From positions 20,150,001 to 20,214,000 of the forward strand of contig NC_042998.1 of the NCBI RefSeq assembly GCF_006345805.1: a stretch of DNA of 64,000 nucleotides, written 5' to 3'. A program made the position numbers and the translations under genes. The stretch comes from Octopus sinensis (taxonomy: Eukaryota). Positions within the stretch are counted from its first letter, which is position 1. Each line of letters begins with the position of its first letter. This document shows, piece after piece, positions 1,189 to 59,485 of this stretch. The notes under the pieces were generated by a model, which was given only the letters and a program-made list of their open reading frames with translations, made no database searches and was not told the DNA's origin.

Positions 1189-3475
1189 AACTTAGAATAA
1201 CTTAGAAAGGTTTGGGCCAGTATTGGCCCAGGCCATGTCTAACTTAATAGCACCACCTGGTGAAGTCTTTCAGTTCATGATTTGGGCACCAAGGCCCATT
1301 CGAGCAGAGAGTTATTGTTTGCGGAGACATATCCGGGTGTGGGTGGTTTGTCCGGTACTGTTTGAAGGAATTTGTCCAAAAACTTCTTGAATTTTGTGTG
1401 GTCAGTTTCTTTTTTGACGTGCCCTGGTGTAATGTTGAAGAGAGCAGGTCCAATTGAGGTGAAATAGTTGTGCCGTATTGTCGTTATGTGATGCGATTAG
1501 ATAGATTTTGTTGTGGACGGATGGCACGTGGTCCAAGCCTTGGATGCATTTTGAAGGTGATGCCAACATCATTCGGACAGTGCTGGTGGAATATTTTCCA
1601 CATCATACAGATAATGTAGCGTTCACGGCGTCGTTGGAGTGAATACAATTTCAGCTTCTCTAGTCTACCCCAGTAGTCAAGGTCTGACATGCCATCTATC
1701 TTTTTTGTGATTGACCTTTGGGGAGCTTCAATTCTCATAATATTTTGTTTTGTGTAGGGAGACCACAGTGGACAGCAGTATTCAAGGTGGGGTCGGGCAA
1801 AAGTGGAGAAGAGAAGGATAATAGCGTGGGAAACTCTCGACTGGAAGGTTCTGAGAATCCAGGAACACATTCTGCGGGCCATGTCAACTTTGCTGCTTAT
1901 ATGTGTAGCCCAGCTTATGTTGCTGTCCACTGTTACTCCCAGGTCTCTGATGTTGTTGGATGCCATGAGAATTTCTCCAGAAGGAAGAGAGTATGGGAGT
2001 TTCAGAGCGTCCTCCCTTCCAAAGTGGATCAGTTCAAATTTGTCTTCATTTAGCAACATGTTATTCTTTTCCGCCCATTGGACAACAGCCAGTAGGTCTG
2101 ACTGAAGGTTTATTCGGTCATCCACGCCATTGATGACCTTCTGGAGCTTGGAGTCATCAGCGAAGGTTCTGATGTTACTGTGTTTGATGGTATCAGTAAT
2201 ATCATTTATGTAGATGATGAAGAGAAGTGGGCCCAACACAGTGCCTTGTGGGACACCACTGCTGACTTTGGCTGGGCTGGATTTGACTCCTTCGACTACA
2301 ACATGTTGGGTTCTGTTAGACAGGAATCACTTGATCCACTGCAGCAACTTTCCAGTGACACCAATATTGGACAGCTTTCTCAGAAGGATCTTATGATCAA
2401 CCCTGTCAAAGGCCTTGCTGAAATCAAGGTAGATGACATCAGTGTTGGAACCTTCTCCCAAGGCTCTCAAAATGTCATCAAAATGATGCAGTAGCTGCGT
2501 CAGGCAATCTCTCCCATTACGGAATCCATGCTGGTTGGGGTTCAGCATATTATGCCTCTCAAGGAAGTGAGTCATACGCGATCTCAGCACCCTCTCAAAT
2601 ACCTTGATGATATGAGAGGTGAGTGAGATTGGACGGTAATTCACGGCAAGCGATTTGTTTCCTTTTTTGAAAACTGGGACAACAGACTGGGATAGAAGGT
2701 CCTCTGGTATATATCCAGCATCCAGTGAGTTCCGCCACAGATTGGCTAGAGGGGGTGCGAGTTGGTTTTGACACATCTTCAAGACACAAGCAGGGACCTA
2801 TCGGGACCTACTGCTGAATTATGCTTCATTTCCTTTATTGCTGCTAAGACATCAGGAGCGCCAAATGTTATGTCCGATAAAGTGTATTGGGGAGTAACAT
2901 CACTGATACAGCCCAGATCAGTCATACAGGAGTGATTGTGAAAACAGAGCAATATTGTTTCTGCAATATCTCTCCCATGGTTTTGGCATTGTCTTGAAGA
3001 GTACCATTTTCATCAATCAGAGGGCCAACAGTAGAACCAGTGACTCTGTGTTTTTTTGCAAATGAAAAGAACACTTTGGGATTGAGTTTGATCTTCTCAA
3101 TGGCCCAGGCCTCTTCAGCTCTTCGCTGACTATTGATGATAGACATCATGTTGTTTTGGAGTTTATGTTTTTAATCTCTAGCGACGAGATGGCAGTCAGG
3201 TTGGTGTGTTGCTGTTGACAGTATTTCAGCATGCTGATCTTTTTGTTGATTCTTTTAATTTTCCTTATGAGAGATTTTCTATTTCTAGGGATTCGACACT
3301 TAGATTTGTTTGCAGATCTTAATGGGGTGTGTCTTGCACATATGTTCGTGATGATGTCTACAAGTGACTGCCAGGACTTTTTAATGTTAGTGGGTGTGTA
3401 TGTGTGCGTGAAGGACCAATCAACTTGTGCAAGATCATTATTGATCGCTTCCCAGTTTGCATTGTGGAAATCCAT
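1189..3475 (-). mobile_element. 5'-truncated CR1/L2-group non-LTR retrotransposon
   Basis: RT motifs VIYLDFSKAFDRVDH, PQGTVLGPLLF and FADD. The 3' UTR ends in a hairpin TGGGCCA-gtat-TGGCCCA (1213-1230) and a tandem TTCTAAGTTA tail. Frameshifts occur upstream of 2782. Confidence 0.9.
1484..2782 (-). pseudogene. reverse transcriptase pseudo-ORF of the CR1/L2-group LINE
   Basis: ORFs 2327-2782 and 1484-2239 are in one frame, joined through a single TGA (QWIK*FLSNRTQHVVVEGVKSSPAKVSSGVPQGTVLGPL). Confidence 0.9.
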
Positions 3476-16790: not shown

Positions 16791-16799
16791 AGTAATTCT

Positions 16800-17400
16800 A
16801 ATTTTTTTATTGCCTACAAAGGGATAAACATAGAGGGGACAAACAAGGACAGACAAACGGATTAAGTCGATTATATTGACCCCTCGTACGTAACTGGTAC
16901 TTATTTAATCGACGCCGAAAGATGAAAAGCAATGTCGACCTCGGCAGAATTTGAACTCAGAACATAACAGCAGAAGAAATACCTATTTCTTTACTGCCTA
17001 CAAGGGGCTAAATATAGAAGGGACAAACAAGGACAGACAAACGGATTAAGTCGATTATATCGACCTCAGTGCGTAACTGGTAGTTAATTTATCGACCCCG
17101 AAAGAAAGAAAAGCAAAGTTGACCTCGGCGGAATTTGAACTCAGAACATAAAGACAGACGAAATACCTATTTCTTTACTGCCCACAAGGGGTTAAAACAC
17201 AGAGAGGACAAACAAGGATAGACAAACGGATTAAGTCGATTATATCGACCCCAGTGCGTTGCTGGTACTTATTTAATCGACCCCGAAAAAATGAAAAGCA
17301 AAGTCGACCTCGACGGAATTTGAACTCAGAACGTAACGGCAGATGAAATACCACTAGGTATTTCATCCGGCGTGCTAACATTTCTGCCAGTTCGCCGCCT
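16800..17400 (-). mobile_element. SINE family A trimer (one headed unit plus two headless units)
   Basis: Junctions GAAATACC|TATTTC at 16983 and 17167 (period 184). Candidate TSD TAACAGTAATTCT / TAGCAGTAGTTCT. Confidence 0.9.
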
Positions 17401-18058
17401 TAGCAGTAGTTCTGTCATCAGAATGCGGTAGCTTTAGGAAGCGCATGCCGGACGTGGGAGTATGAGGCGTTCTTCCGGGATTTATTGCACCTGATGTTCT
17501 TTAGGTGCTGTTGTTTGGCTAAAGGTGGTGGCTAGCCATTCAGAGTTAGGTCTCTGAGGGACTGCTTGGTGTTTGGTGATTTTGTCGGTCACCTTGTTGC
17601 ATTTGTTGCTTATTCATGCAATCTCGTTTCTCCCGTATGCGGCTTTGGCTCTGGTGGTTAGGACTGATTGGTAGTGGACTAAAGGTTTTCTACTAGTAGA
17701 AGTTAGTAAATATGGAGCCTTCCTCTGTGATCCTGAGTTGAAAGTCGAGCAGAGAGAGAGAGAGGTTTCCGGACTCGCCTGGATGTTCAATTTTGTTCAG
17801 AATTTTTGTATATCTCGATGTTATTGAAGGTCCGGTGTATGTTAATGGCGTCATCTCTGGATGTAACATACTTGCTTAGTCTTTTTTACAAAAAATCTGC
17901 AGCGGTTTTTGAAATCTGAGAGATGACATAAGCTATTAGCAATTGTTAATACATTTGTAGTTCTCCCTTCCGTTATATAATCATTTCCGTGTTTGTAATT
18001 TGCATGAATATTTATAAATGTATTCCTATGTGTATATGTACGTATATGTATAAGTTTA

Positions 18059-20483: not shown

Positions 20484-20550
20484 GTAGGTAGGTAGGTAGG
20501 TAGGTAGGTAGTAGGTAGGTAGGTAGGTTGGTAGGTAGGTAGGTAGGTAA

Positions 20551-20956
20551 GGCGGCGAGCTGGCAGAATCGTTAGCACGCCGGACGGAATGCTTAGCGGT
20601 ATTTCGTCTGCCGTTACGTTGTGAGTTCAAATTCCGCCGAGGTCGACTTTGCCTTTCATCCTTTCGGGGTCGATAAATTAAGTACCAGTTACGCACTGGA
20701 GTCGATGTAATCGACTTAATACCTATGTCTGTCCTTGTTTGTCCCCTCTGTGTTTGGCCCCTTGTGGGTAATAAAGAAATAGGTATTTCGTTTGATGCTA
20801 CGTTCTGAGTTCAAATTCCGTTGAGGTCGACTTTGCCTTTCATCCTTTCGGGGTCGATTACATATGTACCAGTTACGCACTGCGGTCGATCTAATCTCTT
20901 TGTCTCTCCTTGTTTGTCCCGTCTATGTTTAGCCCCTTGTGGACAATAAAGAAATA
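20551..20956 (+). mobile_element. SINE family A dimer
   Basis: Headed unit plus headless unit; junction AAAGAAATA|GGTATTTCG near 20781. Confidence 0.9.
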
Positions 20957-22088
20957 AGATAGATAGATAGATTGATTGAGATGGGGAGGCTGAGAGAGAA
21001 TTACTTCTAATATTTGTATAAGAAGACTGGTGATTGATTTCGAAGTTTCGATTTCTTAGGTTTCATTAGCTGACAGAAACTCCGATGTCACTGTCACCAA
21101 TCTTCTTCAAAAAGTAAAACAAATATTTACTCTACAAAACGTATTGGTTAATTTTTCAGTTCCATGTAAAATTGATTTTATCGTCTTATTAATCTCATTA
21201 AGACTCGACATTAAAAGAAGTGTTAACATAGACTCTTTCTAAAAGAAAGAATTTAGACATTGATCACCAGTAGAGCCAACTCTAACGAAGAAAATAAACA
21301 GATGCATTAGTATAACGCTCGGGAATAGAAAAAGTCTTTAACGTTTCGAGCCTACGCTCTACCACAGAAAGGAACGCAGAAAGAAACAAGGAGATAAAAT
21401 AAAGAATGTTATACTAATGCATCTGTTTGTTGTTAACACTGATATACCCTCCAGCCTTCATCAGGTGTCTTGGGGAAAGTTCGAACCTGAGTTCTCATTC
21501 CTAAGGTATTTTTCGATGTTATTACTATTATCATTATTCAGGTCACTGCCTGGAACCGAATTCGATATCTTGGATTTGGTAGCCCGCGCTCCAAACCACT
21601 GCGCCATATGCCCGTGGGCAATTAGGGCTTATAAACCTAATATTTTCATATCCTTCCTTAATACCTGTTCCCATATGCTACCCACATCTGTACTCGGTCT
21701 ACGTATGTGCTGCTTCTTTTAGTTTTCGTATTTTCCAGCTCTGTTCTCTGTCAATTATTTTAACTTCATCCCAGAGGGGCAGTTGGTCTCCGTTTTTCAC
21801 ACATGATCAGCTAAACCCGATTTATCAATATCACCTCATGTCACAGTTTTGCGATGTTCGTTTACCCTTACTTTGACGGGGCTGCATGTTTAACCTTTGT
21901 ATTACCTACCACAGCTACATGGCATGGAGTACACGCAGTCTTTGGTCCTATTCTCTTCTATTGGTGGTTTTATTTGAAGGAGATATTTGCGAATATTCTA
22001 TTGCTCTTGAAACAACAAACAAGATGAGGACAAATATCCGTGAAATGTAAATAATATACATAATTCCTCATCTCTTAATATAGAACTG

Positions 22089-24898: not shown

Positions 24899-24938
<40 letters not shown>

Positions 24939-24945
24939 TACATAG

Positions 24946-25176
24946 AGGCGGCGATCTGGCAGAAACATTAGCACACCGGGCGAAATGCGTAGCCGTATTT
25001 CGTCTGCCGTTACGTTCCGACTTCAAATACCGCCGAGGCCGACTTTGCCTTTCATCCTTTCGGGGTCGATAAATTAAGTACCAGTTACGCACTGGAGTCG
25101 ATGTAATCGACTTATTCCCTTTGTCTGTCCTTGTTTGTCCCCTCTGTGTTTAACCCCTGGTGGGTAGTAAAGAAAT
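24946..25176 (+). mobile_element. SINE family A monomer
   Basis: Full head and AAAGAAATA end, flanked by duplicated ATATATATATATACATTAC. Confidence 0.9.
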
Positions 25177-25437
25177 ATATATATATACATTACTAACATG
25201 GAAAGTAATGCGCTTACATTCTTATTTCACCCACAGCAAGGCTTTCAAATATTCAAACTTACTTCATTTCTTCCGTCGTACGTTGTGTTGTGCAATATAT
25301 ATATATATATATATATATATGCGTGTGCGTCTGTGTGTGTTCGCGCGCGCGTGTGTGTGATGTGTGTATAATTAAATATATATATATATATATTAAAGTA
25401 ACATATATATATGTATACATACACATATACATGCATG

Positions 25438-30856: not shown

Positions 30857-32604
30857 AGCTATATATTGATATAGCTATATATATATTGATATAGCTATAT
30901 ATATATTGATATAGCTATATGTTGTGAGAAGCAATACTGGATCGTCTACACTAGATACAATGAAATTACTGTAATGATTCGAACTCACTGCCCAATCACC
31001 GTCTTTTCTATTTCACCAATGTATTTTTACAACATTAAACCCATTAAATTTCTTCAATTCACACCTTTATATCGGAATGACATTGAATTTCAGCAAAAAT
31101 ATTTTACTTCTCTTTTCAGATTATCTGCTCTATTCAACACTCAGCTAATTTGAAATTCATTGTTTCCTCCATTTTCTAATTCTAGCTTTCTATTTCTTTA
31201 AAAGATTATTTATGACTGTTTATCAATTCGTATATTTATTCAAAAAATGTAATATTGTGATAACCACCAAAACCACCACAAATGCCACTACCATTATCAC
31301 AAATAACCAAAAACTTGAAGAAAAACTAATAATACTTAGTCTGAGCTCGAGATGTCATTTTAACAGGTCACTATTCAAACACAAATGAATTTACTTTTGA
31401 CCTTTTCTTTACATTTTGTATTTTTGCTTCAATATATTTTATTAGATGCGTGTTTTAAACAAATCTGTTATATGTTATTTTTTTCTGAAATAGGCTTGCC
31501 AAAAATATCGTCAACATTCTTCAGACTTTAATGAGAAATGAAAGAATAGAAAAAAATTTTCAATTAGAAGAAAATATAACAGTAAACAAAAGCCATTCGT
31601 TCATTTCAATATGTCTTTCTCGTTGTATTTCTATCATCTTGTTTGAACAATTGATTCTGAACAACGAGAAAAATACTTATTAATATTCCAATGCCTGTTT
31701 ACCAAGGTGGGGAAAACACATTGTTCCTGGAACCGTTGCAGACAAATTATTATAGCAACTTAGATATGCATTTTGGAACAATCACTTAGAATATGATGAT
31801 GATTATATTAATCTATCCATGCCACCGACTAACAGCGGGGCTTTTCGTCTACTTTTTGTTTTATTTTTCTATTTGTTTATGTTTTGCATTGCTCAAAACC
31901 GTTTTTGTCGCCAGCCAGGTTGTCTTTTGTAGAGTTCTTTTTTCTGCAGTTTTTCAGCTGAATAAGCAGTAACAAATTCGTTTACAGATGTTTCCTAAAC
32001 ATGTGCAACTGAAAACGAATGATATCTTACCGCAAAAAGAGAAGATAGAACGGATGCTCATGCTCCTTGTGCCGCAAAAGAGCCTCGATTTTTCGGTGCC
32101 CTAATTCATCTTCTCCTGGAGTTAGTGACACTGGGGACTAAATGATTTTATTTATCCCTACTTCATTGCGAACGATTTCAGTCGCTGCGACCTGTAATGC
32201 TGTGAAAAATTTATTCCTCACAGAAACTAGCTGGTGTCTGCCGTTGTCTGTACCCTTGGAATAGTTTATTACACTTGTCTCTTATCAAAAGAAAGCTTTC
32301 AAGTAACCTTTACATAATACCTCATTTTCAGCCGCTGGGTCTTCGACATATAGCACTACCACTCTCGTTAAACTCCCCCCCCCCTTTACTTCGAAGGATT
32401 ATAAACTTCTGGATAGACGTATTGTTATTGGGGCTCATCAGTGGCTGGGCATTCATGCAGAATCTATCAACCATATGTGATAGCGGTAAACTTCTGCGCT
32501 CGTTACATTGCTGATGACGAAACTCCAAGAGTCGACACCTGTCCAATTACTTCTGGATCTGATCCTCATATTCCTGAGGTTCATACACCGCGATATCAAT
32601 CATA

Positions 32605-32838
32605 TTTATTTCTTTATTGCCCACAGGGGGCTAAACATAGAGGGGACAAAGAAGGACAGACAAAGGGATTAAGTCGATTATATCGACTCCAGAGCGTAAC
32701 TGGTACTTATTTAATCGACCCCGAAAGGATGAAAGGCAAAGTCGACCTCGGCGGAATCTGAACTCAGAACGTAGCGGCAGGCGAAATACCGCTAAGCATT
32801 TCACCCGACGTGCTAACGTTTCTGCCAACTCGCCGCCC
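32605..32838 (-). mobile_element. SINE family A monomer
   Basis: Full length. Confidence 0.9.
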
Positions 32839-34310: not shown

Positions 34311-34764
34311 TGGGATATGCCGATACACACAGATAGAGAAATTAAGGTCAACAGACCAGATATAGTTGTCAGAGATCATGAAGAAAAAAAATGCTTTCTA
34401 ATTGATGTATCAATACCGGCAGATGACAACGTGTCTCTAAAAGAAATGGAGAAACTCTCAAAATACAAAGACCTGGAAATAGAGGTAACTAGAATGTGGA
34501 ACCTGAAAACAGAAACAATTCCTATCATAGTAGGTGCATTAGGCATGATAAAAAAATATTCAGACAAATACATAACAAAAACACCAGGACTTACAAACAC
34601 ATATAACATACAGAAAATTGCACTACTAGGCACTGCACACATCCTACGCAGAACACTTTCCATACAATAACCATCAGAGCATCACAACAAATCACAGCAC
34701 ATACCTAAGGCACACAGAGCTGCGCTCGGTAGTGAAGTGAAAGCACGCTATAAAAATAAAACTA

Positions 34765-34768
<4 letters not shown>
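34310..34768 (+). mobile_element. 5'-truncated R4/Dong-clade element (REL endonuclease C-terminus plus 3' UTR) in (AAT)n
   Basis: WDMPIHTDREIKVNRPDIVVRD..LIDVSIP.D..EKLSKYKDL (PD-(D/E)xK REL domain), with AAT repeats on both sides. Confidence 0.9.
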
Positions 34769-34803
<35 letters not shown>

Positions 34804-35273: not shown

Positions 35274-36326
35274 ATGGAGGCAGTTGAATGCAGATCAGTG
35301 ATCAGGTTCTTATGCTTGAAGGGTCGTACACCAAAAGAGACTTTCGATGAAATGAAGAAAGTTTATGGTGACGGTGCACTATCATATGGCATAGTTTAGC
35401 ACTGGCATCGCCAGTTCAAATGTGGTCGGACATCGGTGAAAATTGCACCTATTCCTGGATGGACGATCACATTCCGCCGTAGATGACGACACCATCCATA
35501 AAGTGGAAGCTGCCATTTTAGAGGATCACTGCATAACTATTCAGCAACTAGCCCAAGAAGTGAAGATAAGTGAAGAGTTCTTGGGAAAAGTCATTCACAA
35601 CCATTTGCACATGCGGAGGTTGTCTGCACGATGGGCTCCCCATATGCACACACCTTTTCAGAAGCAGGAACGAGTCAATTGCTCCCAAGATCTTTTGGCA
35701 ATTTTCAAAGAAAGCGAAAACTTTTTCAGCAAATTTATCACACAGGTTGATATATGGGTCCATCACTATGATCCTGAGATTAAAGTCTAGTCGAAGCAAT
35801 GGAAGTATGACAACTCACCACCTTCAAAGAAGGCTCATGTCCAAACCTCAGCAGATAAGGTGATGCTCACAGTCTTTTGGGACCAATGAGAAGTAGTGAT
35901 GATGGATTTTCTGGCAAAGGGCACCACAATCAACGGAGCATATTATGCTTCGCTGCTGCAGAAATTACGAGACGCTATCAAAGCAGAGAGGCGTAGCATG
36001 CTGACCGAAGGAGTCCGCCTCCTCCAAGACAACACCCTAGTTCACAATGCGAATGTTGCCCAGATGAAAGCACACTGCTGCAGCTATGAAATCCTTCCTC
36101 ATCCCCCTTACTCTCCCGACCACGTCACATCTGACTTCCACCTCCTTCTAACCATGAAGGCTTTTTGAAGGGGAGGCACTTTTCCGATGATAACGAACTT
36201 ATTTCCGAGGTAAAGTCTTGGCTCCAGACGCAAGCAACCGACCTCTATAGACGAGGTCCTCACAGCTGCATAAGGCGATGGGAGAAGTGTGTCACCATTT
36301 GTGGTGGGTATATAGAGAACGACTAA
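35274..36326 (+). pseudogene. mariner-family (DD34D-type) transposase pseudogene
   Basis: MEAVECRSVIRFL.., W(A)PH, WVHHYDPE, LLQDN and HPPYSPD motifs, with several stops and frameshifts. TIRs were not identified. Confidence 0.92.
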
Positions 36327-36785: not shown

Positions 36786-37616
36786 ATATACGCGTGTTAA
36801 TCATATTGAATTATCAGTGGTGTGGAAATTCAAAATGACTTTATGCTTTATGCTTTCAAATTTCAATATAATATGAATGCTAACTTAATATAGCTGTGAA
36901 AATAGAATATTAAATCTTTTGTTTTCCTTTTTCTTTATATCTGTTTCTTTAAAATATAGCACATTTCCTTGATTGCATTGCACAGCAAGTTTTGTGTGTT
37001 ATATTTAATGAGAGGATTGTGTCAACAATTATTTCTATTCTGCGTCTTTGGCTTTGCTTACATGTTTTTAAGATAACATTTCGTTCTGTCGACTCCGGTC
37101 ATGCAAAACATCAAGTCAAAGTGTTTCTAGAAAACCCATATAGATCCCAGTATATATGTTCTGTTTCTAATTTTATTGATGTATTATTCATCGAATCAGT
37201 TATGCTTTTTGCACAACACCAGTAAGCACAAACACAATCATGAACACATATGCATTCATAGCATCCATCCATACATGCATACATATATAGGTACGTACGC
37301 ACGTACATACATAGATAAACTTTTCCAGAATATTATCAGCTAAGTATATATGAGTATGCCTAGATATGCAAGTATATGCATGAAAAGACAAACACAAAAC
37401 AAAACAAAACATACAAACTGCACGTATACATGCATACATAAATACCTTGTTGCTAAGGTTAAAATTCTAGTGAAGGAATCTAGGTTGTATCTAGGTTAGA
37501 AACCATATCTTTTTCTATTGAGAGAAATCTTGAAATAAAACTGAAGGATTACATATATACAGACATACATTCATTCACACATACATACAGACATACATAC
37601 ATACATATGCATACAA

Positions 37617-37848
37617 GGCGGCGAGCTGACAGAAACGTTAGCACGCCGGGCGAAATGTGTAGCCGTATTTCGTCTGCCGCTACGTTATGAGTTCAAATTC
37701 CGCCGAGGTCGACTTTGCCTTTCATCCTTTCGGGGTCGATTAAATAAGTACCAGTTACGCACTTGGGTTGATGTAATTGACTTAATCCCTTTGTCTGTCC
37801 TTGTTTGTCCCCTCTATGTTTAGCCCCCTGTGGGCAATAAAGAAATAG
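37617..37848 (+). mobile_element. SINE family A monomer
   Basis: Full length; TSD ATATGCATACA (37605-37615 / 37851-37861). Confidence 0.9.
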
Positions 37849-38033
37849 ATATATGCATACATACACACATGCATGCATGCATACATGAATACATCATACA
37901 TAGAAATAAAAATGTATATAAATGTAGGCGTAACGAGTGTATTTACGTGTAAGGTTGCGAATACCAATAAACAAAAGTAAGGTTGTGAAAGTTAATCTTT
38001 ACAGCTGTTTCGGATGAACAATGAACGGTACAT

Positions 38034-38884: not shown

Positions 38885-38957
<73 letters not shown>

Positions 38958-38983
38958 TTATTATTATTATTATTATTATTATT

Positions 38984-39198
38984 CAGTAGTTTTGTTTTTA
39001 TAGCGTGCATTCACTTCACTACCGAGCGCAGCTCTGTGTGCCTTGGGTATGTGCTGTGATTTGTTGTGATGCTCTGGTGGTTATTGTATGGAAAGCGTTC
39101 TGCGTAGGATGTGTGCAGTGCCTAGTAGTGCAATTTTCTGTATGTTATATGTGTTTGTAAGTCCTGGTGTTTTTGTTATGTATTTGCCTGAATATTTT
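38984..39198 (-). mobile_element. R4/Dong 3' fragment, same family as 34310-34768, in TAA repeats
   Basis: Reverse complement of 34555-34768; (TTA)n on both sides. Confidence 0.9.
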
Positions 39199-39230
39199 TA
39201 TTATTATTATTATTATTGTTATTATTATTA

Positions 39231-39286
<56 letters not shown>

Positions 39287-39370
39287 GTTGTTGTTGTTAT
39301 TTTAAAAGGATTCACGTAGCTCTTCACAAAGGTAAACAGACGAGACAAATAGCGCAATGCGATTGCAATA

Positions 39371-39659
39371 AACATTTCATTGGTTGAACGATATTTCGAC
39401 AGTAAGTCTGTGTTTGTCGACTTCAAATTAAAAAAGTAATAAAAATTCAAAATTTTAGAATTTCAAATGTAAAGTATGAACGAGAGCAAGTAGCGTCCAC
39501 ACGTTGACAGAATGACATCCTCAGTTTTTGAAAGTTACAATCTTTAAAACCGGCGAAAAGAAAAAGACAGACCCGAATTTCTAAAATTTTGAATTTTTAT
39601 CAATTTTCAATTTGAACTCGACAAAGGCAGACTTACTGTCGTTCAACCAATAAAATATC
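39371..39659. mobile_element. MITE with about 85-bp imperfect TIRs, TA-flanked (Tc1/mariner-like)
   Basis: ATTGGTTGAACGA..CAGTAAGTCTG..TTTGTCGA..TAAAAATTCAAAATTTTAGAA is mirrored at 39575-39659, with TA on both sides. Confidence 0.8.
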
Positions 39660-39716
39660 TACTGCATCGCACCACGCTCTACGTCTTGTCTATTATTATT
39701 ATTATTATTATTATTA

Positions 39717-40186: not shown

Positions 40187-40483
40187 CATTATTATTGGAA
40201 GAAGAAGAAGAAGAAGAAGAAGAGGACAAGGAGGAGGAGGAGGAGGAGGAGGAGGAAGAGGAGGAGGAGGACAAGAATATGAAAATGAAATTTCGTCTTA
40301 AAAAGAACGCAGGATATTCTCGGTCATATTTTGAATTTTTGCATTTCAACGTTCTTTTGATTTTTCATTTTGAAACCCAGGAAGAGAGCCACAATGTTGA
40401 AATATGGTTCAATTCCAAAAACAGTATCAGTTTCCATGTATTACAGATAATATCGCGCTCTTCTTATTGCCCGTGTGTTTAAG

Positions 40484-40808
40484 GCGGCGAGTTGGCAGAA
40501 ACGTTAGCACGCCGGGCGAAATGCGTAGCCGTATTTCGTCTGCCGTTACGTTCTGAGTTCAAATTCCGCCGAGGTCGACTTTGCCTTTCATCCTTTCGGA
40601 CTCGATCAATTAAGTACCAATTACGCACTGGAGTCGATGTAGTCGACTTAATCCGTTTGTCTGTCCTTGTTTGTCCCCTCTGTGTGTAGCCACTTGTGGG
40701 TAGTAAAGAAATAGGTATTTCGTCTGCCGCTACGTTCTGAGTTCAAATTCCCCCGTGGTCGATTTTGCCTTTCATCCTTTCGGGGTCGATAAATAAGTAC
40801 CAGAGACT
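40484..40808 (+). mobile_element. SINE family A dimer (second unit truncated)
   Basis: Junction AAAGAAATA|GGTATTTCGTC near 40713. Confidence 0.9.
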
Positions 40809-45399: not shown

Positions 45400-45978
45400 T
45401 ATTCCTTTCTACTAAACGCACAAGGCTTGAAATTTGAGGGGCGGTAGCTAGTCGATTGCATTGTCCCCAGTGCTCAACTGGTACTTATTTCATCGACCCT
45501 GAAAGGATGAAAATCAAAGTTGACTTATGCCGAATTTGAACTCAGAACGTAAATACGATCAAAATACCTATTTCTTTATTACCCACAAGGGGCTAAATAC
45601 AGAGGGAACAAACAAGGACAGACATAGGTATTAAGTCGATTACATCGACCCCAGTGCGTAACTGGTACTTAATTTATCGACCGAAATGATGAAGGCAAAG
45701 TCGACCTCGGCGAATTTGAACTCACAACGTAATGCAGACGAAATACCTATTTCTTTATTACCCACAAGGGGCTAAACACAGAGGGGACAAACAAGGACAG
45801 ACATAGGTATTAAGTCGATTACATCGACCCCAGTGCGTAACTGGTACTTAATTTATCGACCCCGAAAGGATGAAAGGCAAAGTCGACCTCGGCGGAATTT
45901 GAACTCACAACGTAATGACAGACGAAATACCGCTAAGCATTTCGCCCGGCGTGCTAACGATTCTGCCGGCTTGCCACT
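45400..45978 (-). mobile_element. SINE family A trimer ending in a tail-B unit
   Basis: Junctions AAATACC|TATTTC at 45568 and 45747. The 3'-most unit carries a different tail (..CCCCTCAAATTTCAAGCCTTGTG..). Confidence 0.88.
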
Positions 45979-47526: not shown

Positions 47527-47973
47527 GGATCTTTTCGGTTTGAACGGCAGTTTTTTTTTCTAGCGGTGTCATATGAAATTGTCACCCATAATTATGACCC
47601 TAGTATCGATCTATTGCATTTCAATCTGTTTTTGGGTTAGAGTTAGTTAGGGTTAGTTAGGGTTAGGATTAGGGGTGGAGGGAAAGGTATATTTTTTTCT
47701 TCAGAAATGTAAATAAACCCAATCTGTTTCTTAAACGAGGGGCATATTCATACGGCACAGAATGTTTTCACCTCAGTAGACGTCATTGATTGGTTGAAAT
47801 TGCAGAAATTGAAGAAAAAACAATAACAAATATCTTACAAACTATAGAATTTTCTCAATAAAGCCAAGAGAAAAAGATGTTTTATAAACACATTATACCA
47901 GTATACGAAGTTTAAAAGTGTTTAGTTACGTAGAAATTATTTTTAAAAACTGCCGTTCAAACCGAAAAGATCC
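47527..47973. mobile_element. MITE with 29-bp perfect TIRs
   Basis: GGATCTTTTCGGTTTGAACGGCAGTTTTT at both ends, AATAA on both flanks, and internal GGGTTA-like repeats. Confidence 0.9.
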
Positions 47974-48892: not shown

Positions 48893-49249
48893 AATTAGTC
48901 TGAGACATTATAATAATTGTTATATTGACCGATTTTCTCATCGATTTTCAAACATCTATATATACTTTCAGAAGTAATTACAGAACCTGTTCAGCTCGGT
49001 CTAATAATGGGCGTACCATATTTAACAAAAGAAAGCTTCCGTCACTGATAAGGATAAGATTTTTGATTCTATAATGATCTGATATTTGTTTTATATATAT
49101 TTGAGTTTGACAGGGAAATCTTTAACAATATCAAAAAACTAAATAATAGCTAAAATCAAGAGGCTCAGGGAAGTTTGGTGATTGTAAAATTTGGTTGATC
49201 TGAATTGTAAACAATTCCAATGATTTGGGCAAATGTATTTGATACTCTT

Positions 49250-49457
49250 TACTCTTTACTCTTTTAATTTTTTCAGTCATTTGACTGCGGCCATGCTGGA
49301 GCACCGCCTTTAGTCAAGCAAATCGACCCCGGGACTTATTCTTTGTAAGCCCAGTACTTATTCTATCGGTCTCTTTTGCCGAACCACTAAGTGACGGGGA
49401 CGCAAACACACCAGCATCGGTTGTCAAGCAATGCTAGGGAGACAAACACACACACAA

Positions 49458-49489
<32 letters not shown>

Positions 49490-49497
49490 TATATTAT

Positions 49498-49553
<56 letters not shown>

Positions 49554-49735
49554 ATATATATATACATATATACGACAAGCTTCTTTCAGTTTCCGTCTAC
49601 CAAATCCACTCACAAGGCATTGGTCGGCCCGGGGCTATAGCAGAAGACACTTGCCCAAGATGCCACGCAGTGGGACTGAACCCGGAACTCTGTGGTTGGT
49701 TAGCAAGCTACTTACCACACAGCCACTCCTGCGCC
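49250..49735 (-). mobile_element. SINE family B
   Basis: As at 27350, with a long internal (TA)n. Confidence 0.88.
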
Positions 49736-49809: not shown

Positions 49810-50422
49810 GAATATTATTTTTCTACTCTAGGAACAAGGTCCGAAATATTGGGGGAAGGCGACAGTCGATTAGATTGACCCCAGTACGCAACAGGTACTT
49901 AATGTATCGACCCCGAAAAGATGAAAGGCAAAGTCGACATCGGTGTAATTTGAACGAAGAATGTCAAGACAGATCAAATACTGCTAAGCATTTCGCTCGG
50001 CGGGTTAACGTCTCGTATTTTTTCACTGCTCTCAAGGGGCTACACAGAGAGGGGACAAACAAGGACAGACAAAGGGATTAAGTTGATTACATCGACTCCA
50101 GTGTGTAACTGCTACTTAATTTATCAACCCCGAAAGCATGAAAGGCAACGTCGACCTCGGTGGAATTTGAACTCAAAACGTAAAGACAGATGAAATACCT
50201 ATTTATTTACTACCCACAAGGGGCCAAACACAGAGAGGACAGAGAAACGGATTAAGCCGATTATATCGACCCCAGTGCGTAACTGGTACGTATTTAATCG
50301 ACCCCGAAAGGATAAAAGGCAAAGTCGACCTCGGCGGATTTTGAACTCAGAATGTAACGGCAGACGAAATACCGCTAAGCATTTCGCCCGGCGTACTAAC
50401 GATTCTGCCAGCTCGCCGCCTT
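49810..50422 (-). mobile_element. SINE family A dimer joined to a tail-B SINE
   Basis: Canonical junction at 50199; a different junction at about 50015 into a tail-B head. Confidence 0.85.
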
Positions 50423-50804
50423 ACTGAAACAGAATATCGAAGAGGAGATGAATACAGAGAGTAAGAAATATAGAGAGGTGTTGCTTATATGGAAAGAGAG
50501 AGAGACAGAGACAAACAGACAAACAGAGAAAGAGACAGAGGAGCAAGGGAGAGGGAGAGAGAAAGAGAGAAATAGTTGGTATGAGAGGCGGTCGGAAATA
50601 CGAGTTACTTAACAGAGAGGTGTTTGATATGATACATAGGGAGAAAAAGGGGTCTGATAGTTTAGGGTGTCATAGTCGTTCCTTTTTTAAGCTGCAACTT
50701 CGGTTGCCTCGATTCCTTTACACAAAGCAACCTACATACATATATCCATATATTTACAATTAAACATAGATATATCCTTCTATATAGAGACTTAAATATA
50801 TATA

Positions 50805-52986: not shown

Positions 52987-53117
52987 TGCATATATATTTT
53001 TTTGTAAAAGATAAAAATTTCATCTGTCAGTACTTTACCTCCAAAAACAAAAATGTGTTTACAGTGATTTGTAATACTTGGATGGGATACATGTTTATAT
53101 TACAAATTCAAGTAATG

Positions 53118-53162
<45 letters not shown>

Positions 53163-53183
53163 TAATAATAATAATAATAATAT

Positions 53184-53730
53184 AAATGCCCTGATGCAGT
53201 ACCAGGCAGTGGCTCTCATGGCTTCTGATCTTAACTGATTGGAAGTGTTATCATGTACATTGTTTTGTCTTGGTATAAAAGATTGGCTACAGCAAATATT
53301 CTGCTCAATACCACAGATTTGCTTGTCAGTTGTTTGACCTTAACCAGTTGAGCATGTCCCTTAGTGGCTGACGATATGTGCATCTCTGATCACGAGCAGA
53401 AGTAGTGGGGGAGCATCATAGCCATGTGTTGAGAGGGATTCTTTGGGGTTTGAATAGTTCACCTCTGGAAACATGGGTGGTTCTTTCAACATCCTTAAAC
53501 AAGCCTTATTCAGGGACCTTTTGAGCGGGATGGGCTACTCAACCTGAAGAAAATTCTAACTGGGCCCCACCTGCTGTTTATCTTGATATGAGATCACCAT
53601 GTCGCGCACATATGGTTGTGATGCATGTGCCTGGTGTACCTTTATCAGACGGGTAGTCATGATGGGTATATTGGGCTCCGTATATTTTACCCCAGTGTCA
53701 CTTTGATGGCATGAACTGCTCTCTCACTCA
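53184..53730 (+). mobile_element. about 550-nt non-coding element inserted in a TAA repeat (copy 2)
   Basis: (AAT)n on both sides; homologous to 13543-14057; no ORF, A/B box or TIR seen. Confidence 0.8.
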
Positions 53731-53823: not shown

Positions 53824-54352
53824 CATAATAAAAACGTTTACTCAACATGCAGGAATTGAAAATCTGTTTAGTATATCTCAAACTACCCTCTGAAACGGCC
53901 GTAGGTTCTAACTGAATTTCACTTTCCGTGGTTTTTAAATTGACTTTTACGTTCATAATACCTCGTATTACGAAACTCTATCCTCTCTCAAATACATGTA
54001 TCTGCACACATATGCTATTATATATTTGTTCCTCTACATTTTATATCTTATTTTTATTATATATTTTATTTTTTATTTTTGTATTATTATTTGTCCTTTT
54101 ATTTCTTTATTATTACTTGAATTTGCAATGTAAACATGTACGCCATCCAAGTCTTATAAATCACTGTAAACATGATTTCGTTTTCGGATGTAATGTTCTG
54201 ACAACTGAAAGTGTTTTCTTCTACAAAAACTTTTATTACTCTTTAGCTCATAAACGAGCAAAAAACAGTTGTACGATATATGGAGTATTGTCTCCATTAA
54301 ATATTCCCTTACTTACATATAAATACATATATATATGCATAAATATATACAT

Positions 54353-54407
<55 letters not shown>

Positions 54408-54454
54408 TCTAGATTTTTATATTCTAACCAAGTTGTTTCGGCATGTTAAAAGAA

Positions 54455-54615
54455 CCATTATGGCTGTGTAGTAAGTAGCTTGCTAACCAGCCACATGGTT
54501 GCGGGTTCAGTCCCAGTGCGTGGCATCTTGGGTAATTACCTTCTGCTATAGCCTGGGGCTGACCAATGCCTTGTGAGTGGATTTGGTAGACGGAAACTGA
54601 AAGAAGCCTGTCGTA

Positions 54616-54700
<85 letters not shown>

Positions 54701-54908
54701 GTGTGTCTGTCTTTGTCCCCTAGCATTGCTTGACAACCGATGCTGGTGTGTTTACGTCCCCGTCACTTAGCGGTTCAGCAAAAGAGACCGATAGAATAAG
54801 TACTGGGCTTACAAAGATTAAGTACCGGGGTCGATTTGCTCGACTAAATGTGATGCTCCAGCATGGCCGCAGTCAAAATGACTGAAACAAGTAAAAGAGT
54901 AAAAGAGT
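54455..54908 (+). mobile_element. SINE family B
   Basis: Head TGGCTGTGTAGTAAGTAGCTTGC, internal (TA)n(TG)n and tail AAGTAAAAGAGTAAAAGAG. Confidence 0.88.
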
Positions 54909-55002
54909 AAATATATATATATATTCTACGTTAAAGAATGACATTGCTCGAAAACGCTGAAGTGCAGTGGCATTTTCCTATTTAAGAATGCATAAATCAG
55001 TC

Positions 55003-56131: not shown

Positions 56132-56255
56132 GTATATAAACGTATGTGTTGCTTGAGGTATATAAACGTACGTGTTGCTTGATGTATATAAACGTACGTG
56201 TTGCTTGATGTATATAAACGTACGTGTTGCTTGAGGTATATTAAACGTACGTGTG
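56132..56255. repeat. 26-bp minisatellite, about 4.7 copies
   Basis: Unit GTATATAAACGTACGTGTTGCTTGA(G/T). Confidence 0.9.
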
Positions 56256-57525
56256 TATCGGCTCCGTGTGTATCACGTACGTGTGTATCAGATCCGGCAT
56301 CAATACGTCTTCCTTTGTATGGATATTTGATTACGAATGTGTTTACTCATATCTCTGGTCGTCTATTAAATTTGAAGATTGCCTATCTTTATGTTTGCGT
56401 AATTAAAGGGTATAAAATCAAATTCGTGTTATCTGATAAGTTGGTATGCATTTTGTAGAGGAGAAATCCCACGTTTCGGAAATGTTTGTTCATTTCAGGG
56501 AAAAAAAATATTTTGAAAATATTTTTTATCGGTGTTATATCGCTATTCATTTCTCAGAACTTTCAGGTTTCCCCTTTTTCGTTTCTCCTCATTTTTTTTA
56601 CATTTTGTTCTTTGTTTCTTCCTTACGTTAATACACTTTACACTCCAACACGTACTCCCACCTCTGTCGCTTTCTTTCTTTCCACGTGCCTCACTTATTT
56701 TACATTCTCTTACAGAAGAAACAATTCTGTTTTCATACCATTGGTTTATTGCAGTTGTTCATTCTCTATTCTTCATCCTCTTCTCTCATTTCTCTTCTCC
56801 CATTGAACTCCCAACGCCTTTCACTCGTTCGATTTCTTTGTTCATGTTTTTTTCCCTTCTTTCCATGCAACTGCATTTTACATCCATACCCTTCCACACA
56901 TCTATCACACCTCCAAGATTTCTCTGGCTTTACCTTTTACCTTACACTCTCACACCTGCGCCCAACTTCCCACTTTCACCCTTTTGTCACACATACAACC
57001 AATATGGTTACACATACATACACACACAAACACCCACGCACCACAATACTTCCGTACTTGTGCAACTCAACAAACTTATATACACCACAAATTATCACAC
57101 ACACTGCTGTCTCCAAAGAGCGTAACGCACCATATGTGCGCAAACCTTTGCTCCACTTTCCGTCTAAATTCTCCAAAAGAAAATCGCTTCAGTCTTCTCA
57201 ACCGCTTTTCCTTATTCTCACTTCTCCCACGCTTTCTTCTGATGAAAGACTAACAACCAAAACGTAAAAACTGCTTCTCTTGTTCTTGAAAGTCATGAAT
57301 TAATAAGATATTTATTTAAACTTTTCACTCCGGTGTTGTAAGTATGTATAAAAGTATATATCTTAGTAGCTGTGTATAAACGAATAGCGATATATACATG
57401 ATTGCTTATATGCAGCAAAAGCCCGTGTGATAGGTTTTCGCATGGTAAGAAGCATAATATTCTGTCTTTTGATTCAACAGCCACATGTAAGTGGGGATAA
57501 ATAATACCATTTGGTATTAATGTAC

Positions 57526-57562
<37 letters not shown>

Positions 57563-57633
57563 TTGGTAAAAACGGTAAGATAACAAAAGAAAGAGACCTC
57601 AATATTATGTAAATAGAGGAAATTTATCTATAA

Positions 57634-57869
57634 AATAATATGTTACAATTACTCAATAGTCAAGATAAAACTCTGAGTTTCAGATGCCGAAGTGGAAATC
57701 CACAACACCATCTCTTCGGTTATCTGGCCATCTGAATATAAGCAATCATGTATATATCGCTATTCTTTCAGATGGCCAGATAACCGAAGAGATGGTGTTA
57801 TGGATTTCCACTTCGGCATCTGAAACTCAGAGTTTTATCTTGACTATTGAGTAATTGTAAGATATTATT
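57634..57869. repeat. 236-bp palindrome (103-bp arms, 30-nt spacer)
   Basis: Arms 57634-57736 and 57767-57869 with 2 mismatches. Confidence 0.95.
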
Positions 57870-58091
57870 ATTATATATATATATATATATTGATTATATC
57901 TGCACTGACGATTAAAAGGTGCATTTTGTGCACTAATTATGAAATCATATGATCTGTGGTTGAATCTGTTTTTAAAGAGCTTGCTTCGAGAGTAGCATTT
58001 CCTCGCGTTCGGTACAATGCGTTTATTATGGTAGTTTTGTCTTTAAGAGTCCCTCGTAGTGTGAGGCATATTATGCACAGTAATGCCCTTA

Positions 58092-58766: not shown

Positions 58767-59089
58767 ATATATAATATATATATATATCCATGTATACACA
58801 CACATTCACACATGCACGCATAGACTCACATGCGCACACACACACATACGCTTTCGAAGAGTAATTATCCCAGTCATAAATTTTGCAAACAACGGGTGGA
58901 AATGACAACCAACATGTTAAATTGAAAATCTCTAATTCTGCTGTAAATAATTTAGTCGTATATTCAAAGATTTATAAAGCGGACTTAGATTTACAAGAAA
59001 ATTAAACATAGAAGGACGCCTTTTAACTTCACATCTACTCGGCTAATGTTCTTTTTCGATGTTAAATTACAATTCCACTCTTCTCTCTT

Positions 59090-59485
59090 CTACTCTTCTA
59101 CTTGTTTCAGTCATTTGACTGCGGCTATGCTGGAGCACCGCCTTTAGTCGAGCAAATCGACCCCGGGACTTATTCTTTGTAAGCCTAGCACTTATTCTAT
59201 CGGTCTCTTTTGCCGAACCGCTAGGTGACGGGGACGTAAACACACCAGCATCGGTTGTCAAGCAATGCTAGGGGAACAAACACACACACATACACACATA
59301 TACATATATATATATATACATATATACGACAGGCTTCTTTCAGTTTCCGTCTACCAAATCCACTCACAAGGCATTGGTCGGTCCGGGGCTATAATAGAAG
59401 ACACTTGCCCAAGATGCCATGCAGTGGGACTGAACCCGGAACCATGTGGCTGGTTAGCAAGCTACTTACCACACAGACACTCCTG
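59090..59485 (-). mobile_element. SINE family B
   Basis: As at 27350, with a short internal microsatellite. Confidence 0.88.

What the first reader, a model, noticed from the sequence alone, without database searches (positions are those of the whole stretch)
57382..57869. 236-bp palindrome whose spacer is an inverted copy of unique sequence about 350 bp upstream
Seen: 103-bp arms (57634-57736 / 57767-57869) with only 2 mismatches. Bases 57736-57765 (ATATAAGCAATCATGTATATATCGCTATTC) are the exact reverse complement of 57382-57411, outside the element. Inference: this is a two-step template switch (fold-back synthesis or RT/repair template jumping) that captured flanking DNA, and it is recent given the identity. 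If transcribed it would form a hairpin of about 100 bp, a potential ADAR or Dicer substrate.
Basis: partly seen in the sequence, partly recalled or inferred. Interest (0 to 1): 0.7.

Follow-up and report, generated by a model that had tools for sequence, protein, structure and literature searches.

The report
Fold-back duplication scar with templated spacer
A 236-bp DNA hairpin in non-coding, repeat-rich animal (octopus-like) DNA is most likely a scar of error-prone DNA copying: a DNA end folded back on its own strand, copied 30 bases from about 325 bases upstream, then copied its own last 103 bases. This is a clear example of a known mutation type, not a gene or a mobile element.

Summary
The arms 57634-57736 and 57767-57869 are 103 nt long with 2 substitutions. 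The 30-nt centre is an exact reverse-complement copy of 57382-57411, and no such match is expected by chance. The arms occur only once in the window. The structure has no target-site duplication, whereas a real MITE in the same window shows a clean 8-bp one. It has no coding signal and no relatives in any collection I could search.

The junctions carry short shared bases (microhomology). The copy of the upstream sequence extends to 35/37 matches (CTG-x-30-x-TT). Its single mismatch lies 2 nt before the switch into the right arm, and the outer junction falls in ATT/(TA)n sequence.

Best reading: a scar of chained snap-back (template-switch) DNA synthesis at a stalled or broken 3' end next to a (TA)n tract. 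Both templates lie behind that end on the same strand. The main rival is a two-event history: a palindrome formed first, then a break at its centre was repaired with a templated filler. A mobile element, an assembly artefact and a small-RNA gene are less likely. The Rfam mir-9 hit is below threshold and is largely an effect of the perfect hairpin.

No outgroup, reads or expression data were available, so the mechanism is inferred. It is a new member of a known kind, of modest interest.

The parts
57382..57411 (+). Source segment U: the 30 nt whose exact reverse complement forms the centre of the palindrome. With one mismatch on each side the homology extends to 57379-57415.
57514..57563 (.). 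(TA)n/(AT)n microsatellite between U and the left arm. It is self-complementary and forms a hairpin in the predicted fold of the single strand.
   Evidence: TRF 57526-57560, period 2; DNA fold.
57634..57736 (+). Left arm L (103 nt), inferred to be the ancestral copy. It contains a short internal inverted repeat: TTCAGATG at 57679-86 and CATCTGAA at 57729-36.
57732..57736 (+). Junction 1 microhomology. The end of L, CTGAA, matches CTGCA, the reverse complement of 57411-57415 (4 of 5 bases, including the terminal A).
   Evidence: alignment; (35/37).
57737..57766 (+). Spacer or filler (30 nt). Positions 57736-57765 are the exact reverse complement of U. Position 57766 is T where a continued copy of U would give G.
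57766..57768 (+). Junction 2. After the mismatch at 57766, TT (57767-68) is shared by the continued copy of U and the start of the right arm: a 2-nt microhomology.
57767..57869 (+). Right arm R (103 nt), the reverse complement of L with 2 substitutions (57800, 57861). Inferred to be the newly synthesised copy.
57864..57890 (.). Junction 3 and the adjoining (ATT)3(TA)n tract. The end of R (ATTATT) runs into ATTATATATA..., so the return point lies in repetitive AT-rich microhomology. This is the inferred stall or break site.

Best explanation
This is a mutational scar, not a gene or a mobile element. A 3' DNA end at position 57736, at the border of an ATT/(TA)n tract, left its template. That end was either a nascent strand at a stalled fork or the resected tail of a double-strand break.

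Inferred steps:
1. The end snapped back onto its own strand, or onto the identical sister template, about 325 nt behind. It was primed by the microhomology CTG.A and copied 32-33 nt of 57410-57379 in reverse complement.
2. It misincorporated at 57766 and dissociated.
3. It re-annealed through its terminal TT to the AA at 57735-36 and copied the last roughly 101 nt of its own strand, which became the right arm.
4. It returned to the original template, or joined the other break end, within the ATT/(TA)n run.

The net effect is an insertion of about 133 nt (57737-57869) into ...CCATCTGAA|ATTATATATA.... The result is a 2 x 103-bp inverted duplication with a locally templated 30-nt centre.

Shown directly: the sequence relationships, the microhomologies and the absence of mobile-element and gene hallmarks. 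Inferred: the order of steps, the polarity (L ancestral) and the enzyme (a Pol theta- or Pol delta-type polymerase). The structure most likely has no function, although any transcript through it would carry a roughly 100-bp double-stranded RNA stem.
For: - The repeat geometry is exact and far beyond chance.
- Both templated pieces are reverse complements of sequence lying 5' of position 57736 on the same strand. That is the geometry snap-back synthesis produces (snap-back gives reverse-complement inserts, PMC5068794; cis-templated extension by Pol theta, PMC4912351).
- The flanks of the 30-mer match at 5 of 7 further positions (CTG.A and .TT), P about 0.03 by chance.
- The only mismatch of the U copy lies 2 nt before the switch. 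In C. elegans templated inserts, errors cluster where extension aborts.
- No target-site duplication was found for 57634-57869 or for 57382-57765. The same test gives a clean 8-bp duplication for the MITE at 47527-47973.
- The arms are single-copy in the window. No homologue of the ORF spanning the hairpin exists among 1.84 billion representative proteins. There are no DNA hits in the metagenome or viral collections.
- Pfam finds no coding signal in the surrounding ORFs.
- Published events are of comparable scale: template switches of 90-125 bp and chained 62+32-bp events in humans (PMC9435742); fold-back insertions of 10 to more than 150 bp with a 41-nt loop at yeast breaks (PMC11724301); whole hairpin stems made in one event (PMC10710096).
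- The two arm differences are substitutions, which argues for a real, somewhat aged locus rather than an in-silico chimera.
Against: - There is no outgroup, second haplotype or read data, so the ancestral state and the polarity are inferred only.
- The upstream template is about 325 nt away. That is far for Pol theta-type inserts, about 85% of which are primed within 10 bp of the break and most of which are under 25 bp.
- A single chained event needs the second snap-back to land exactly at the first switch point. AA sites at 57740 and 57744 were closer alternatives. A centre-break history explains this symmetry without coincidence.
- A TA target-site duplication would be invisible inside a palindrome, so the duplication test cannot exclude a Tc1/mariner-type MITE.
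- A partial third copy of the U motif at 56533-56553 is unexplained.
Confidence: 0.5

Rival explanations
1. Two separate events. First a perfect or nearly spacer-less palindrome L|R arose, by a simple fold-back or template switch or by insertion of a palindromic element. Later it broke at its centre of symmetry (nicking of the hairpin or cruciform tip). The break was repaired by end joining in which the left end snapped back on U, copied about 32 nt and joined the right end through the TT microhomology. The 30-nt asymmetric centre then made the palindrome more stable.
For: - The filler sits exactly at the centre of symmetry, and both arms end at the same base. This is what a centre break predicts, with no coincidence needed.
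- The second event would then be one ordinary snap-back templated insertion with microhomology at both junctions.
- Long palindromes with no spacer or a short one are fragile, and spacers stabilise them (PMC7999016; PMC3300023, which cites Cunningham et al. 2003 on centre-break revision).
Against: - It needs two rare events at one site.
- No arm sequence was lost, whereas centre-break repair usually deletes some.
- There is no independent evidence that a spacer-less ancestor existed.
- The mismatch counts (2/103 in the arms, 0/30 or 1/33 in the filler) have no power to date the two steps separately.
Confidence: 0.25
2. The 236-bp palindrome is a copy of a mobile element (a MITE or Foldback-like element with long inverted arms, perhaps with a TA target-site duplication). 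Its loop was later rewritten by local templated repair.
For: - Long terminal inverted arms and a small size are typical of MITEs.
- The window is rich in mobile elements and holds a real MITE.
- A TA duplication cannot be scored inside a palindrome.
Against: - There is no second copy, even a diverged one, of the arms in 64 kb.
- There is no scorable target-site duplication.
- No hits were found in any searchable collection, although the host species seems absent from them.
- It does not by itself explain the locally templated centre and so needs the extra repair event anyway.
Confidence: 0.1
3. The copying went the other way. The hairpin with its loop is older, and the 30 nt at 57382-57411 are the copy, made by a template switch that used the single-stranded loop of the extruded hairpin as template.
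For: The sequence relationship and the junction microhomologies are symmetric and do not by themselves give a direction. A loop is single-stranded and accessible, which would explain why the copy equals the loop.
Against: It needs an independent origin for the palindrome plus a second event 325 nt away. The partial third copy at 56533-56553 matches U together with U's own flank (TTCGTTT against TTCATTT) as well as it matches the spacer. That fits U lying in older resident sequence.
Confidence: 0.05
4. Assembly or library artefact: a chimeric fold-back read or an amplification chimera incorporated into the consensus.
For: Inverted chimeras with microhomology junctions are a known product of strand-displacing polymerases and of long-read library preparation (my own knowledge, not tested here). 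The finding rests on a single assembly.
Against: - The arms differ by two substitutions. An artefact copied from one molecule should give identical arms.
- The spacer is local genomic sequence, not adapter.
- No other near-perfect close palindromes occur in the window.
- The structure lies in the interior of the window.
Confidence: 0.05
5. A functional hairpin-RNA locus: a miRNA of the mir-9 family, or a long-hairpin endo-siRNA precursor.
For: - Rfam RF00237 (mir-9) scores 55.4 bits, close to its gathering score of 58.6.
- The 23-mer at 57713-57735, next to the loop, matches the mir-9 5p consensus at 18 of 23 positions. About 4.5e-5 of shuffled arms reach this for one family.
- The RNA stem is very stable.
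Against: - The hit is below the gathering score and scores equally on both strands.
- A moss family (MIR1023) scores higher, at 62.6 bits, so much of the score comes from the perfect hairpin itself.
- There are 5 mismatches including one in the seed, whereas mature miR-9 is essentially invariant across bilaterians (my own knowledge).
- A 103-bp perfect stem is not pri-miRNA-like; the preferred stem is about 35 bp (PMC10710096).
- After allowing for roughly a thousand miRNA families tested, the sequence match is only about P 0.05-0.1.
- There are no expression data, and the sequence string appears in no held paper.
Confidence: 0.03

Closest known systems
Short-range template-switch mutations (Ripley quasi-palindrome model; four-point model of Loytynoja and Goldman; PMC5453318, PMC9435742, PMC10710096)
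   Same: A nearby sequence is copied in reverse complement in one replication error. This creates a perfect inverted repeat or hairpin. Events of 90-125 bp and chained two-segment events are reported. Low-complexity DNA is often involved.
   Different: This case is a net insertion with two non-adjacent templates in swapped order, one of them about 325 nt away. Published scans typically limit the switch distance to 250 bp or less. No ancestral allele is available here to run the four-point test.
Polymerase theta-mediated end joining with snap-back templated insertions (PMC5068794, PMC4912351)
   Same: The insert is a reverse complement copied from the same flank. Priming uses 1 nt or a few nt. 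Prime-extend-dissociate cycles are repeated. The error lies close to the abort point.
   Different: Typical inserts are under 25 bp and are primed within about 10 bp of the break. Here the segments are 30-33 nt from 325 nt away plus 101-103 nt.
Local fold-back inversions at double-strand breaks in yeast (Yu et al. 2024, PMC11724301)
   Same: The resected end forms a hairpin through short inverted microhomology (41-nt loop). Synthesis of 10 to more than 150 bp gives an inverted insertion. Complex inserts with two pieces from one locus occur.
   Different: Those are experimental somatic events at an HO endonuclease cut, dependent on Pol delta and NHEJ. This is a germline-fixed event with an additional distal filler.
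Centre-break revision of palindromes (Cunningham et al. 2003, cited in PMC3300023; review PMC7999016)
   Same: An asymmetric centre in an otherwise perfect palindrome, and the stabilising effect of a spacer.
   Different: Centre-break repair usually deletes arm sequence. Here the arms are intact and the centre is a templated insertion.
FoSTeS/MMBIR complex rearrangements and fold-back inverted duplications (PMC3907307; Lee 2007 and Zhang 2009 as cited in PMC9435742)
   Same: Serial microhomology-mediated template switches, and inverted duplications with a spacer between the arms.
   Different: Those span kilobases to megabases. This one is about 130 bp.
MITEs and Foldback transposable elements
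   Same: A short non-coding element made almost entirely of two long inverted arms.
   Different: No second copy, no scorable target-site duplication, and a centre copied from the local flank.

Membership tests
Template-switch mutation (TSM) | The new sequence is the reverse complement of nearby sequence on the same chromosome | tested here: met
   The spacer is the reverse complement of 57382-57411 (30/30). R is the reverse complement of L (101/103).
Template-switch mutation (TSM) | An ancestral allele exists from which one switch-and-return event (four-point alignment) explains the derived allele better than a linear alignment | not testable with these tools
   No outgroup or second haplotype could be retrieved. 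Exact-ORF look-ups, homologue searches and collection scans all returned nothing.
Template-switch mutation (TSM) | Short switch distance (published scans use 250 bp or less) | tested here: inconclusive
Pol theta-type (TMEJ) templated insertion | Microhomology of 1 nt or more at the priming and resolution junctions | tested here: met
   CTG.A (4/5 including the terminal base), TT, and ATT-repeat overlap.
Pol theta-type (TMEJ) templated insertion | Insert short (mostly under 25 bp) and template within about 10 bp of the break | tested here: not met
   Segments of 30-33 nt and 101-103 nt, with one template 325 nt away (against PMC5068794). It works like TMEJ snap-back, but its size is atypical.
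Pol theta-type (TMEJ) templated insertion | Dependence on POLQ | not testable with these tools
   This needs genetics.
MITE / Foldback transposable element | Target-site duplication flanking the inverted termini | tested here: inconclusive
   No duplication of 3 bp or more at consistent boundaries. A TA duplication cannot be scored because TA is self-complementary within a palindrome. The control MITE at 47527-47973 gives an 8-bp AATAATAA.
MITE / Foldback transposable element | Multiple dispersed copies in the genome | tested here: not met
   Single copy within the 64-kb window and no hits in the searchable collections. The host genome itself could not be searched, so this result is limited to the window.
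mir-9/mir-79 precursor (RF00237) | Score at or above the Rfam gathering threshold | tested here: not met
   55.4 and 55.1 bits against 58.6, on both strands. The unrelated MIR1023 scores 62.6.
mir-9/mir-79 precursor (RF00237) | Conserved mature sequence and seed | tested here: not met
   18/23 matches to the consensus, with a mismatch inside the seed (TCTTCGG against TCTTTGG).
Hairpin-RNA / endo-siRNA locus | Transcription of the inverted repeat and small RNAs mapping to the arms | not testable with these tools
   No expression data. Only the folding potential was shown.

The most novel reading that the evidence does not exclude
The hairpin is a newborn small-RNA locus created in one stroke by template switching in a cephalopod-like genome. 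It would be a roughly 100-bp double-stranded RNA stem whose loop-proximal arm happens to be miR-9-like (18/23). Its complementary arm would pair with the seed of genuine miR-9 through one G:U wobble. If transcribed it could yield siRNAs or miRNA-like RNAs, act as a sponge, or be a strong ADAR substrate. A related possibility is that it represents a recurrent process that builds hairpins with locally templated loops.
Probability: 0.04. Interest if true: 0.6.

Novelty: new member of a known kind. Interest (0 to 1): 0.3.

Why it matters
If the reading is right, all three junctions of a chained fold-back or template-switch mutation can be read directly from the sequence: the primer microhomology, a misincorporation at the abort point, and the return within a (TA)n tract. 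The event is at the upper end of sizes reported for local template switching, and one switch is unusually distant at about 325 nt. Events like this are the proposed raw material for new hairpin RNAs (PMC10710096). They also show how AT microsatellites seed structural mutations. In a lineage with heavy RNA editing, a roughly 100-bp perfect double-stranded RNA stem would be an obvious substrate if it is transcribed. On its own it is one anecdote of a known mutational class, and nothing indicates a function.

Tried and rejected
- Comparative data. Four exact look-ups of window ORFs found nothing on record: the ORF inside the hairpin, two flanking ORFs and the LINE reverse-transcriptase ORF. The 193-aa flank ORF has no homologues. 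The 56-aa hairpin ORF has none among 1.84 billion representatives. Exact-pattern scans of metagenome contigs (2), viral contigs (2) and prokaryote genomes (1) gave only two 19-mer hits in bacterial MAGs. That is about the number expected by chance for 596 Gb. The host species seems absent from every collection, so no empty site could be obtained.\n- An element spanning 57382-57765 with 30-bp terminal inverted repeats. Rejected: it has no target-site duplication (flanks ATAAAC and TTTCAG), and it would leave the right arm unexplained.\n- A simple inverted copy of a contiguous U...L block with an internal deletion. Rejected: the order of the copies (U copy, then L copy) is the reverse of what that predicts.\n- A retroelement or reverse-transcriptase origin. 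There is no poly-A, no target-site duplication and no tRNA-like head, and the nearest reverse-transcriptase sequence is 55 kb away.\n- mir-9 membership. Rejected.\n- A protein-coding context. Pfam found nothing credible in 10 ORFs around the site.\n- A literature search for the arm sequence returned nothing.\n- Cunningham et al. 2003 (PMC262683) is not held in the library.

Full report
**1. Observation**

The sequence is as described. The repeat finder gives one outstanding inverted repeat. Its arms are 57634-57736 and 57767-57869, 103 nt each, 98% complementary and separated by 30 nt. The two differences are substitutions: 57642 G against 57861, and 57703 C against 57800.

The 30-mer at 57736-57765 occurs once more in the window, as an exact reverse complement at 57382-57411. 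No match appeared in 100 dinucleotide-preserving shuffles, even with 3 mismatches allowed. The arm core occurs only as the two arms.

As RNA the region folds into a single stem at -181 kcal/mol (z = -33). As DNA it folds at -118 kcal/mol (z = -31).

**2. Context**

The window is eukaryotic. It has about 36% G+C and is full of (TA)n, (CA)n and trinucleotide runs. It carries a broken LINE reverse transcriptase at 1484-2782(-) (Pfam RVT_1) and several SINE-like repeat families.

The closest named relative of the reverse transcriptase is an Octopus sinensis protein at 64% identity. The best hit overall (76%) lies on a 934-bp contig of assembly GCA_024449705.1. The genome is therefore probably from a cephalopod, but this is a weak assignment. 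The species itself seems absent from the protein collections.

Ten ORFs around the hairpin have no credible Pfam match, and there are no tRNA-like sequences. The site is non-coding DNA. It lies between a (TA)17 tract (57526-57560) and an (ATT)3(TA)n tract that begins at the very end of the right arm.

**3. Anatomy of the junctions**

I aligned the centre (57722-57780) with the reverse complement of 57367-57425. The identity is not limited to the 30-mer. It reads CTG-x-[30 exact]-x-TT, which is 35 of 37 positions. Three junctions follow from this.

- Junction 1. The end of the left arm, ...CTGAA, matches the sequence next to U (CTGCA in reverse complement) at 4 of 5 positions, including the terminal base.
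- Junction 2. If the copy of U is continued it gives G-T-T where the sequence has T-T-T. There is one mismatch, at 57766, and then TT. That TT is also the first two bases of the right arm.
- Junction 3. The right arm ends in ATTATT and runs into ATTATATATA....

Five matches among the 7 bases flanking the 30-mer have a chance probability of about 0.03. So every junction carries microhomology, and the only error in the copy of U lies 2 nt before the switch.

**4. What it is not**

*Not an evident mobile element.*
- The arms have no second copy in 64 kb, even a diverged one.
- A scan for target-site duplications, allowing 8 nt of boundary slack, finds only inconsistent AT-rich 4-mers for 57634-57869. 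It finds nothing for the alternative 'element' 57382-57765.
- The same scan returns a clean 8-bp AATAATAA for a real MITE with 29-bp perfect inverted ends at 47527-47973.
- One caveat: a TA duplication cannot be scored inside a palindrome.

*Not a simple inverted copy of a contiguous block.* The copies appear in the order U-copy then L-copy. The reverse complement of U...L would give the opposite order.

*Not retroelement-like.* There is no poly-A, no target-site duplication, and the nearest reverse-transcriptase sequence is 55 kb away.

*Not a mir-9 gene.*
- Rfam gives 55.4 bits for RF00237 against a gathering score of 58.6, and the scores on the two strands are almost equal.
- A moss family, MIR1023, scores higher at 62.6 bits. 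Much of the score is therefore an effect of the perfect hairpin.
- The 23-mer at 57713-57735 matches the mir-9 5p consensus at 18 of 23 positions, with a mismatch in the seed.
- Only about 4.5e-5 of shuffled arms do as well for one family. With roughly a thousand miRNA families tested, this is a P of about 0.05-0.1 coincidence.
- I record it as a curiosity.

**5. Mechanism**

Both templated pieces are reverse complements of sequence that lies 5' of position 57736 on the same strand. This is the geometry produced when a 3' end folds back and uses its own strand, or the identical sister template, as template. Snap-back extension gives reverse-complement inserts (PMC5068794). Pol theta alternates between cis-templated, trans-templated and untemplated extension (PMC4912351). 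Intrastrand and interstrand template switches during replication give the same geometry (PMC10710096).

My preferred model has these steps.
1. A nascent or resected 3' end at 57736, at the border of the (TA)n tract, disengages.
2. It anneals through CTG.A next to U, about 325 nt behind.
3. It is extended by 32-33 nt, misincorporates at 57766 and dissociates.
4. It re-anneals through TT to AA at 57735-36 and is extended by about 101 nt along the left arm.
5. It dissociates again and returns to the original template, or joins the other break end, within the ATT/(TA)n run.

The predicted ancestral junction is ...TCGGTTATCTGGCCATCTGAA|ATTATATATATA....

With the left arm ancestral, both templates lie behind the 3' end. 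With the right arm ancestral, the copy of U would have to come from unreplicated DNA ahead of the end. I therefore prefer the first polarity, but this is inference.

An error close to the abort point matches what was seen for templated inserts in C. elegans. The scale matches published events:
- human template switches of 90-125 bp, and a chained 62+32-bp event, with the authors' statement that local switches can be chained (PMC9435742);
- fold-back insertions of 10 to more than 150 bp with a 41-nt loop at yeast breaks (PMC11724301);
- whole hairpin stems created in one event (PMC10710096).

The predicted fold of the single-stranded tail 57375-57736 is more stable than shuffles (z = -3.6). It includes the (TA)n hairpin, which would shorten the effective distance between U and the 3' end. 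This is suggestive only.

**6. Main rival**

The filler sits exactly at the centre of symmetry. In the single-event model this requires the second snap-back to land at the first switch point, although AA sites at 57740 and 57744 were nearer.

A two-event history explains the symmetry without coincidence. A spacer-less palindrome L|R arose first. It then broke at the hairpin tip and was repaired with one snap-back templated insertion from U. Spacer-less palindromes are fragile and spacers stabilise them (PMC7999016; PMC3300023). The mismatch counts (2/103 against 0/30) cannot date the steps.

My probabilities:
- single chained event: about 0.5;
- palindrome followed by centre repair: about 0.25;
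- mobile element followed by centre repair: about 0.1;
- reverse copying direction: about 0.05;
- artefact: about 0.05.

A functional RNA role (about 0.03) is not exclusive of any of these origins.

**7. Artefact**

The two substitutions between the arms, the genomic rather than adapter origin of the spacer, and the absence of other near-perfect close palindromes in the window all argue against a chimeric-read artefact. Only the raw reads can settle this.

**8. Unexplained**

A third, partial copy of the U motif (TGT-TATATCGCTATTCATTT) lies at 56533-56553. It matches U with its flank, and the spacer with its junction, equally well. The alignment score is 30, reached by 1.3% of shuffles. It may be chance, an old short repeat, or a trace of an earlier switch.

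The left arm also contains a short internal inverted repeat: TTCAGATG...CATCTGAA, plus CCGAAG/CTTCGG.

**9. Verdict**

It remains an inference from one sequence, and the choice between one event and two is open. The locus belongs to a known class of mutation, so it is a new member of a known kind. Interest is modest (0.3). It would rise only if the hairpin proves to be expressed and processed, or if such locally templated hairpins turn out to be recurrent in this genome.

Noticed in passing
window 47527-47973: A 447-bp MITE with perfect 29-bp terminal inverted repeats (GGATCTTTTCGGTTTGAACGGCAGTTTTT) and a clean 8-bp target-site duplication AATAATAA, which is hAT-like. It contains degenerate TTAGGG-like repeats at about 47636-47675. 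I used it as a positive control for the target-site duplication test.
   Followed up: partly
window 57704-57799 (both strands): A sub-threshold Rfam hit to mir-9/mir-79 (55.4 bits, gathering score 58.6). The arm 23-mer at 57713-57735 matches the mir-9 5p consensus at 18/23 positions and lies next to the loop. The hit is largely an effect of the perfect hairpin, since the moss family MIR1023 scores 62.6. The sequence match alone is still a P of about 0.05-0.1 coincidence after multiple testing.
   Followed up: partly
window 56533-56553: A third, partial copy of about 20 nt of the U/spacer motif. The 13-mer TATATCGCTATTC is exact at 56536, 57382(-) and 57753. Next to it lies a 31-nt A/T quasi-palindrome at 56500-56530. 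Unexplained.
   Followed up: partly
window 57679-57736: The left arm contains its own short inverted repeat: TTCAGATG/CATCTGAA (8 bp) plus CCGAAG/CTTCGG (6 bp). This may be a pre-existing quasi-palindrome that favoured fold-back.
   Followed up: no
window 34545-34803 and 38949-39207: A pair of 260-bp inverted repeats, 96.5% identical and about 4.1 kb apart. They bracket a mariner-like transposase fragment (ORF 35443-35790). They may be the long inverted ends of a DNA transposon.
   Followed up: no
window 39335-39464 / 39575-39694 and 52999-53184 / 54044-54229: Two further close inverted repeat pairs of 130 and 187 nt, 78-79% identical, 111 and 860 nt apart. They are older hairpin-forming structures, either mobile-element pairs or old MITEs.
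   Followed up: no
window 1484-2782(-); also 16797-17402, 20547-20959, 24904-25183, 32602-32837, 37615-37852, 40480-40803, 45569-45975, 50013-50424; and 49248-49725, 54438-54913, 59085-59479: A frame-broken LINE reverse transcriptase (Pfam RVT_1). Its best named relative is an Octopus sinensis protein at 64% identity; the best overall is 76% on a contig of GCA_024449705.1. There are also two abundant SINE-like repeat families with 72-92% identity between copies in both orientations. Together they suggest a cephalopod-like genome.
   Followed up: partly
window 56132-56254: A 26-bp tandem repeat (4.7 copies, 95% identical) about 1.1 kb upstream of the source segment.
   Followed up: no
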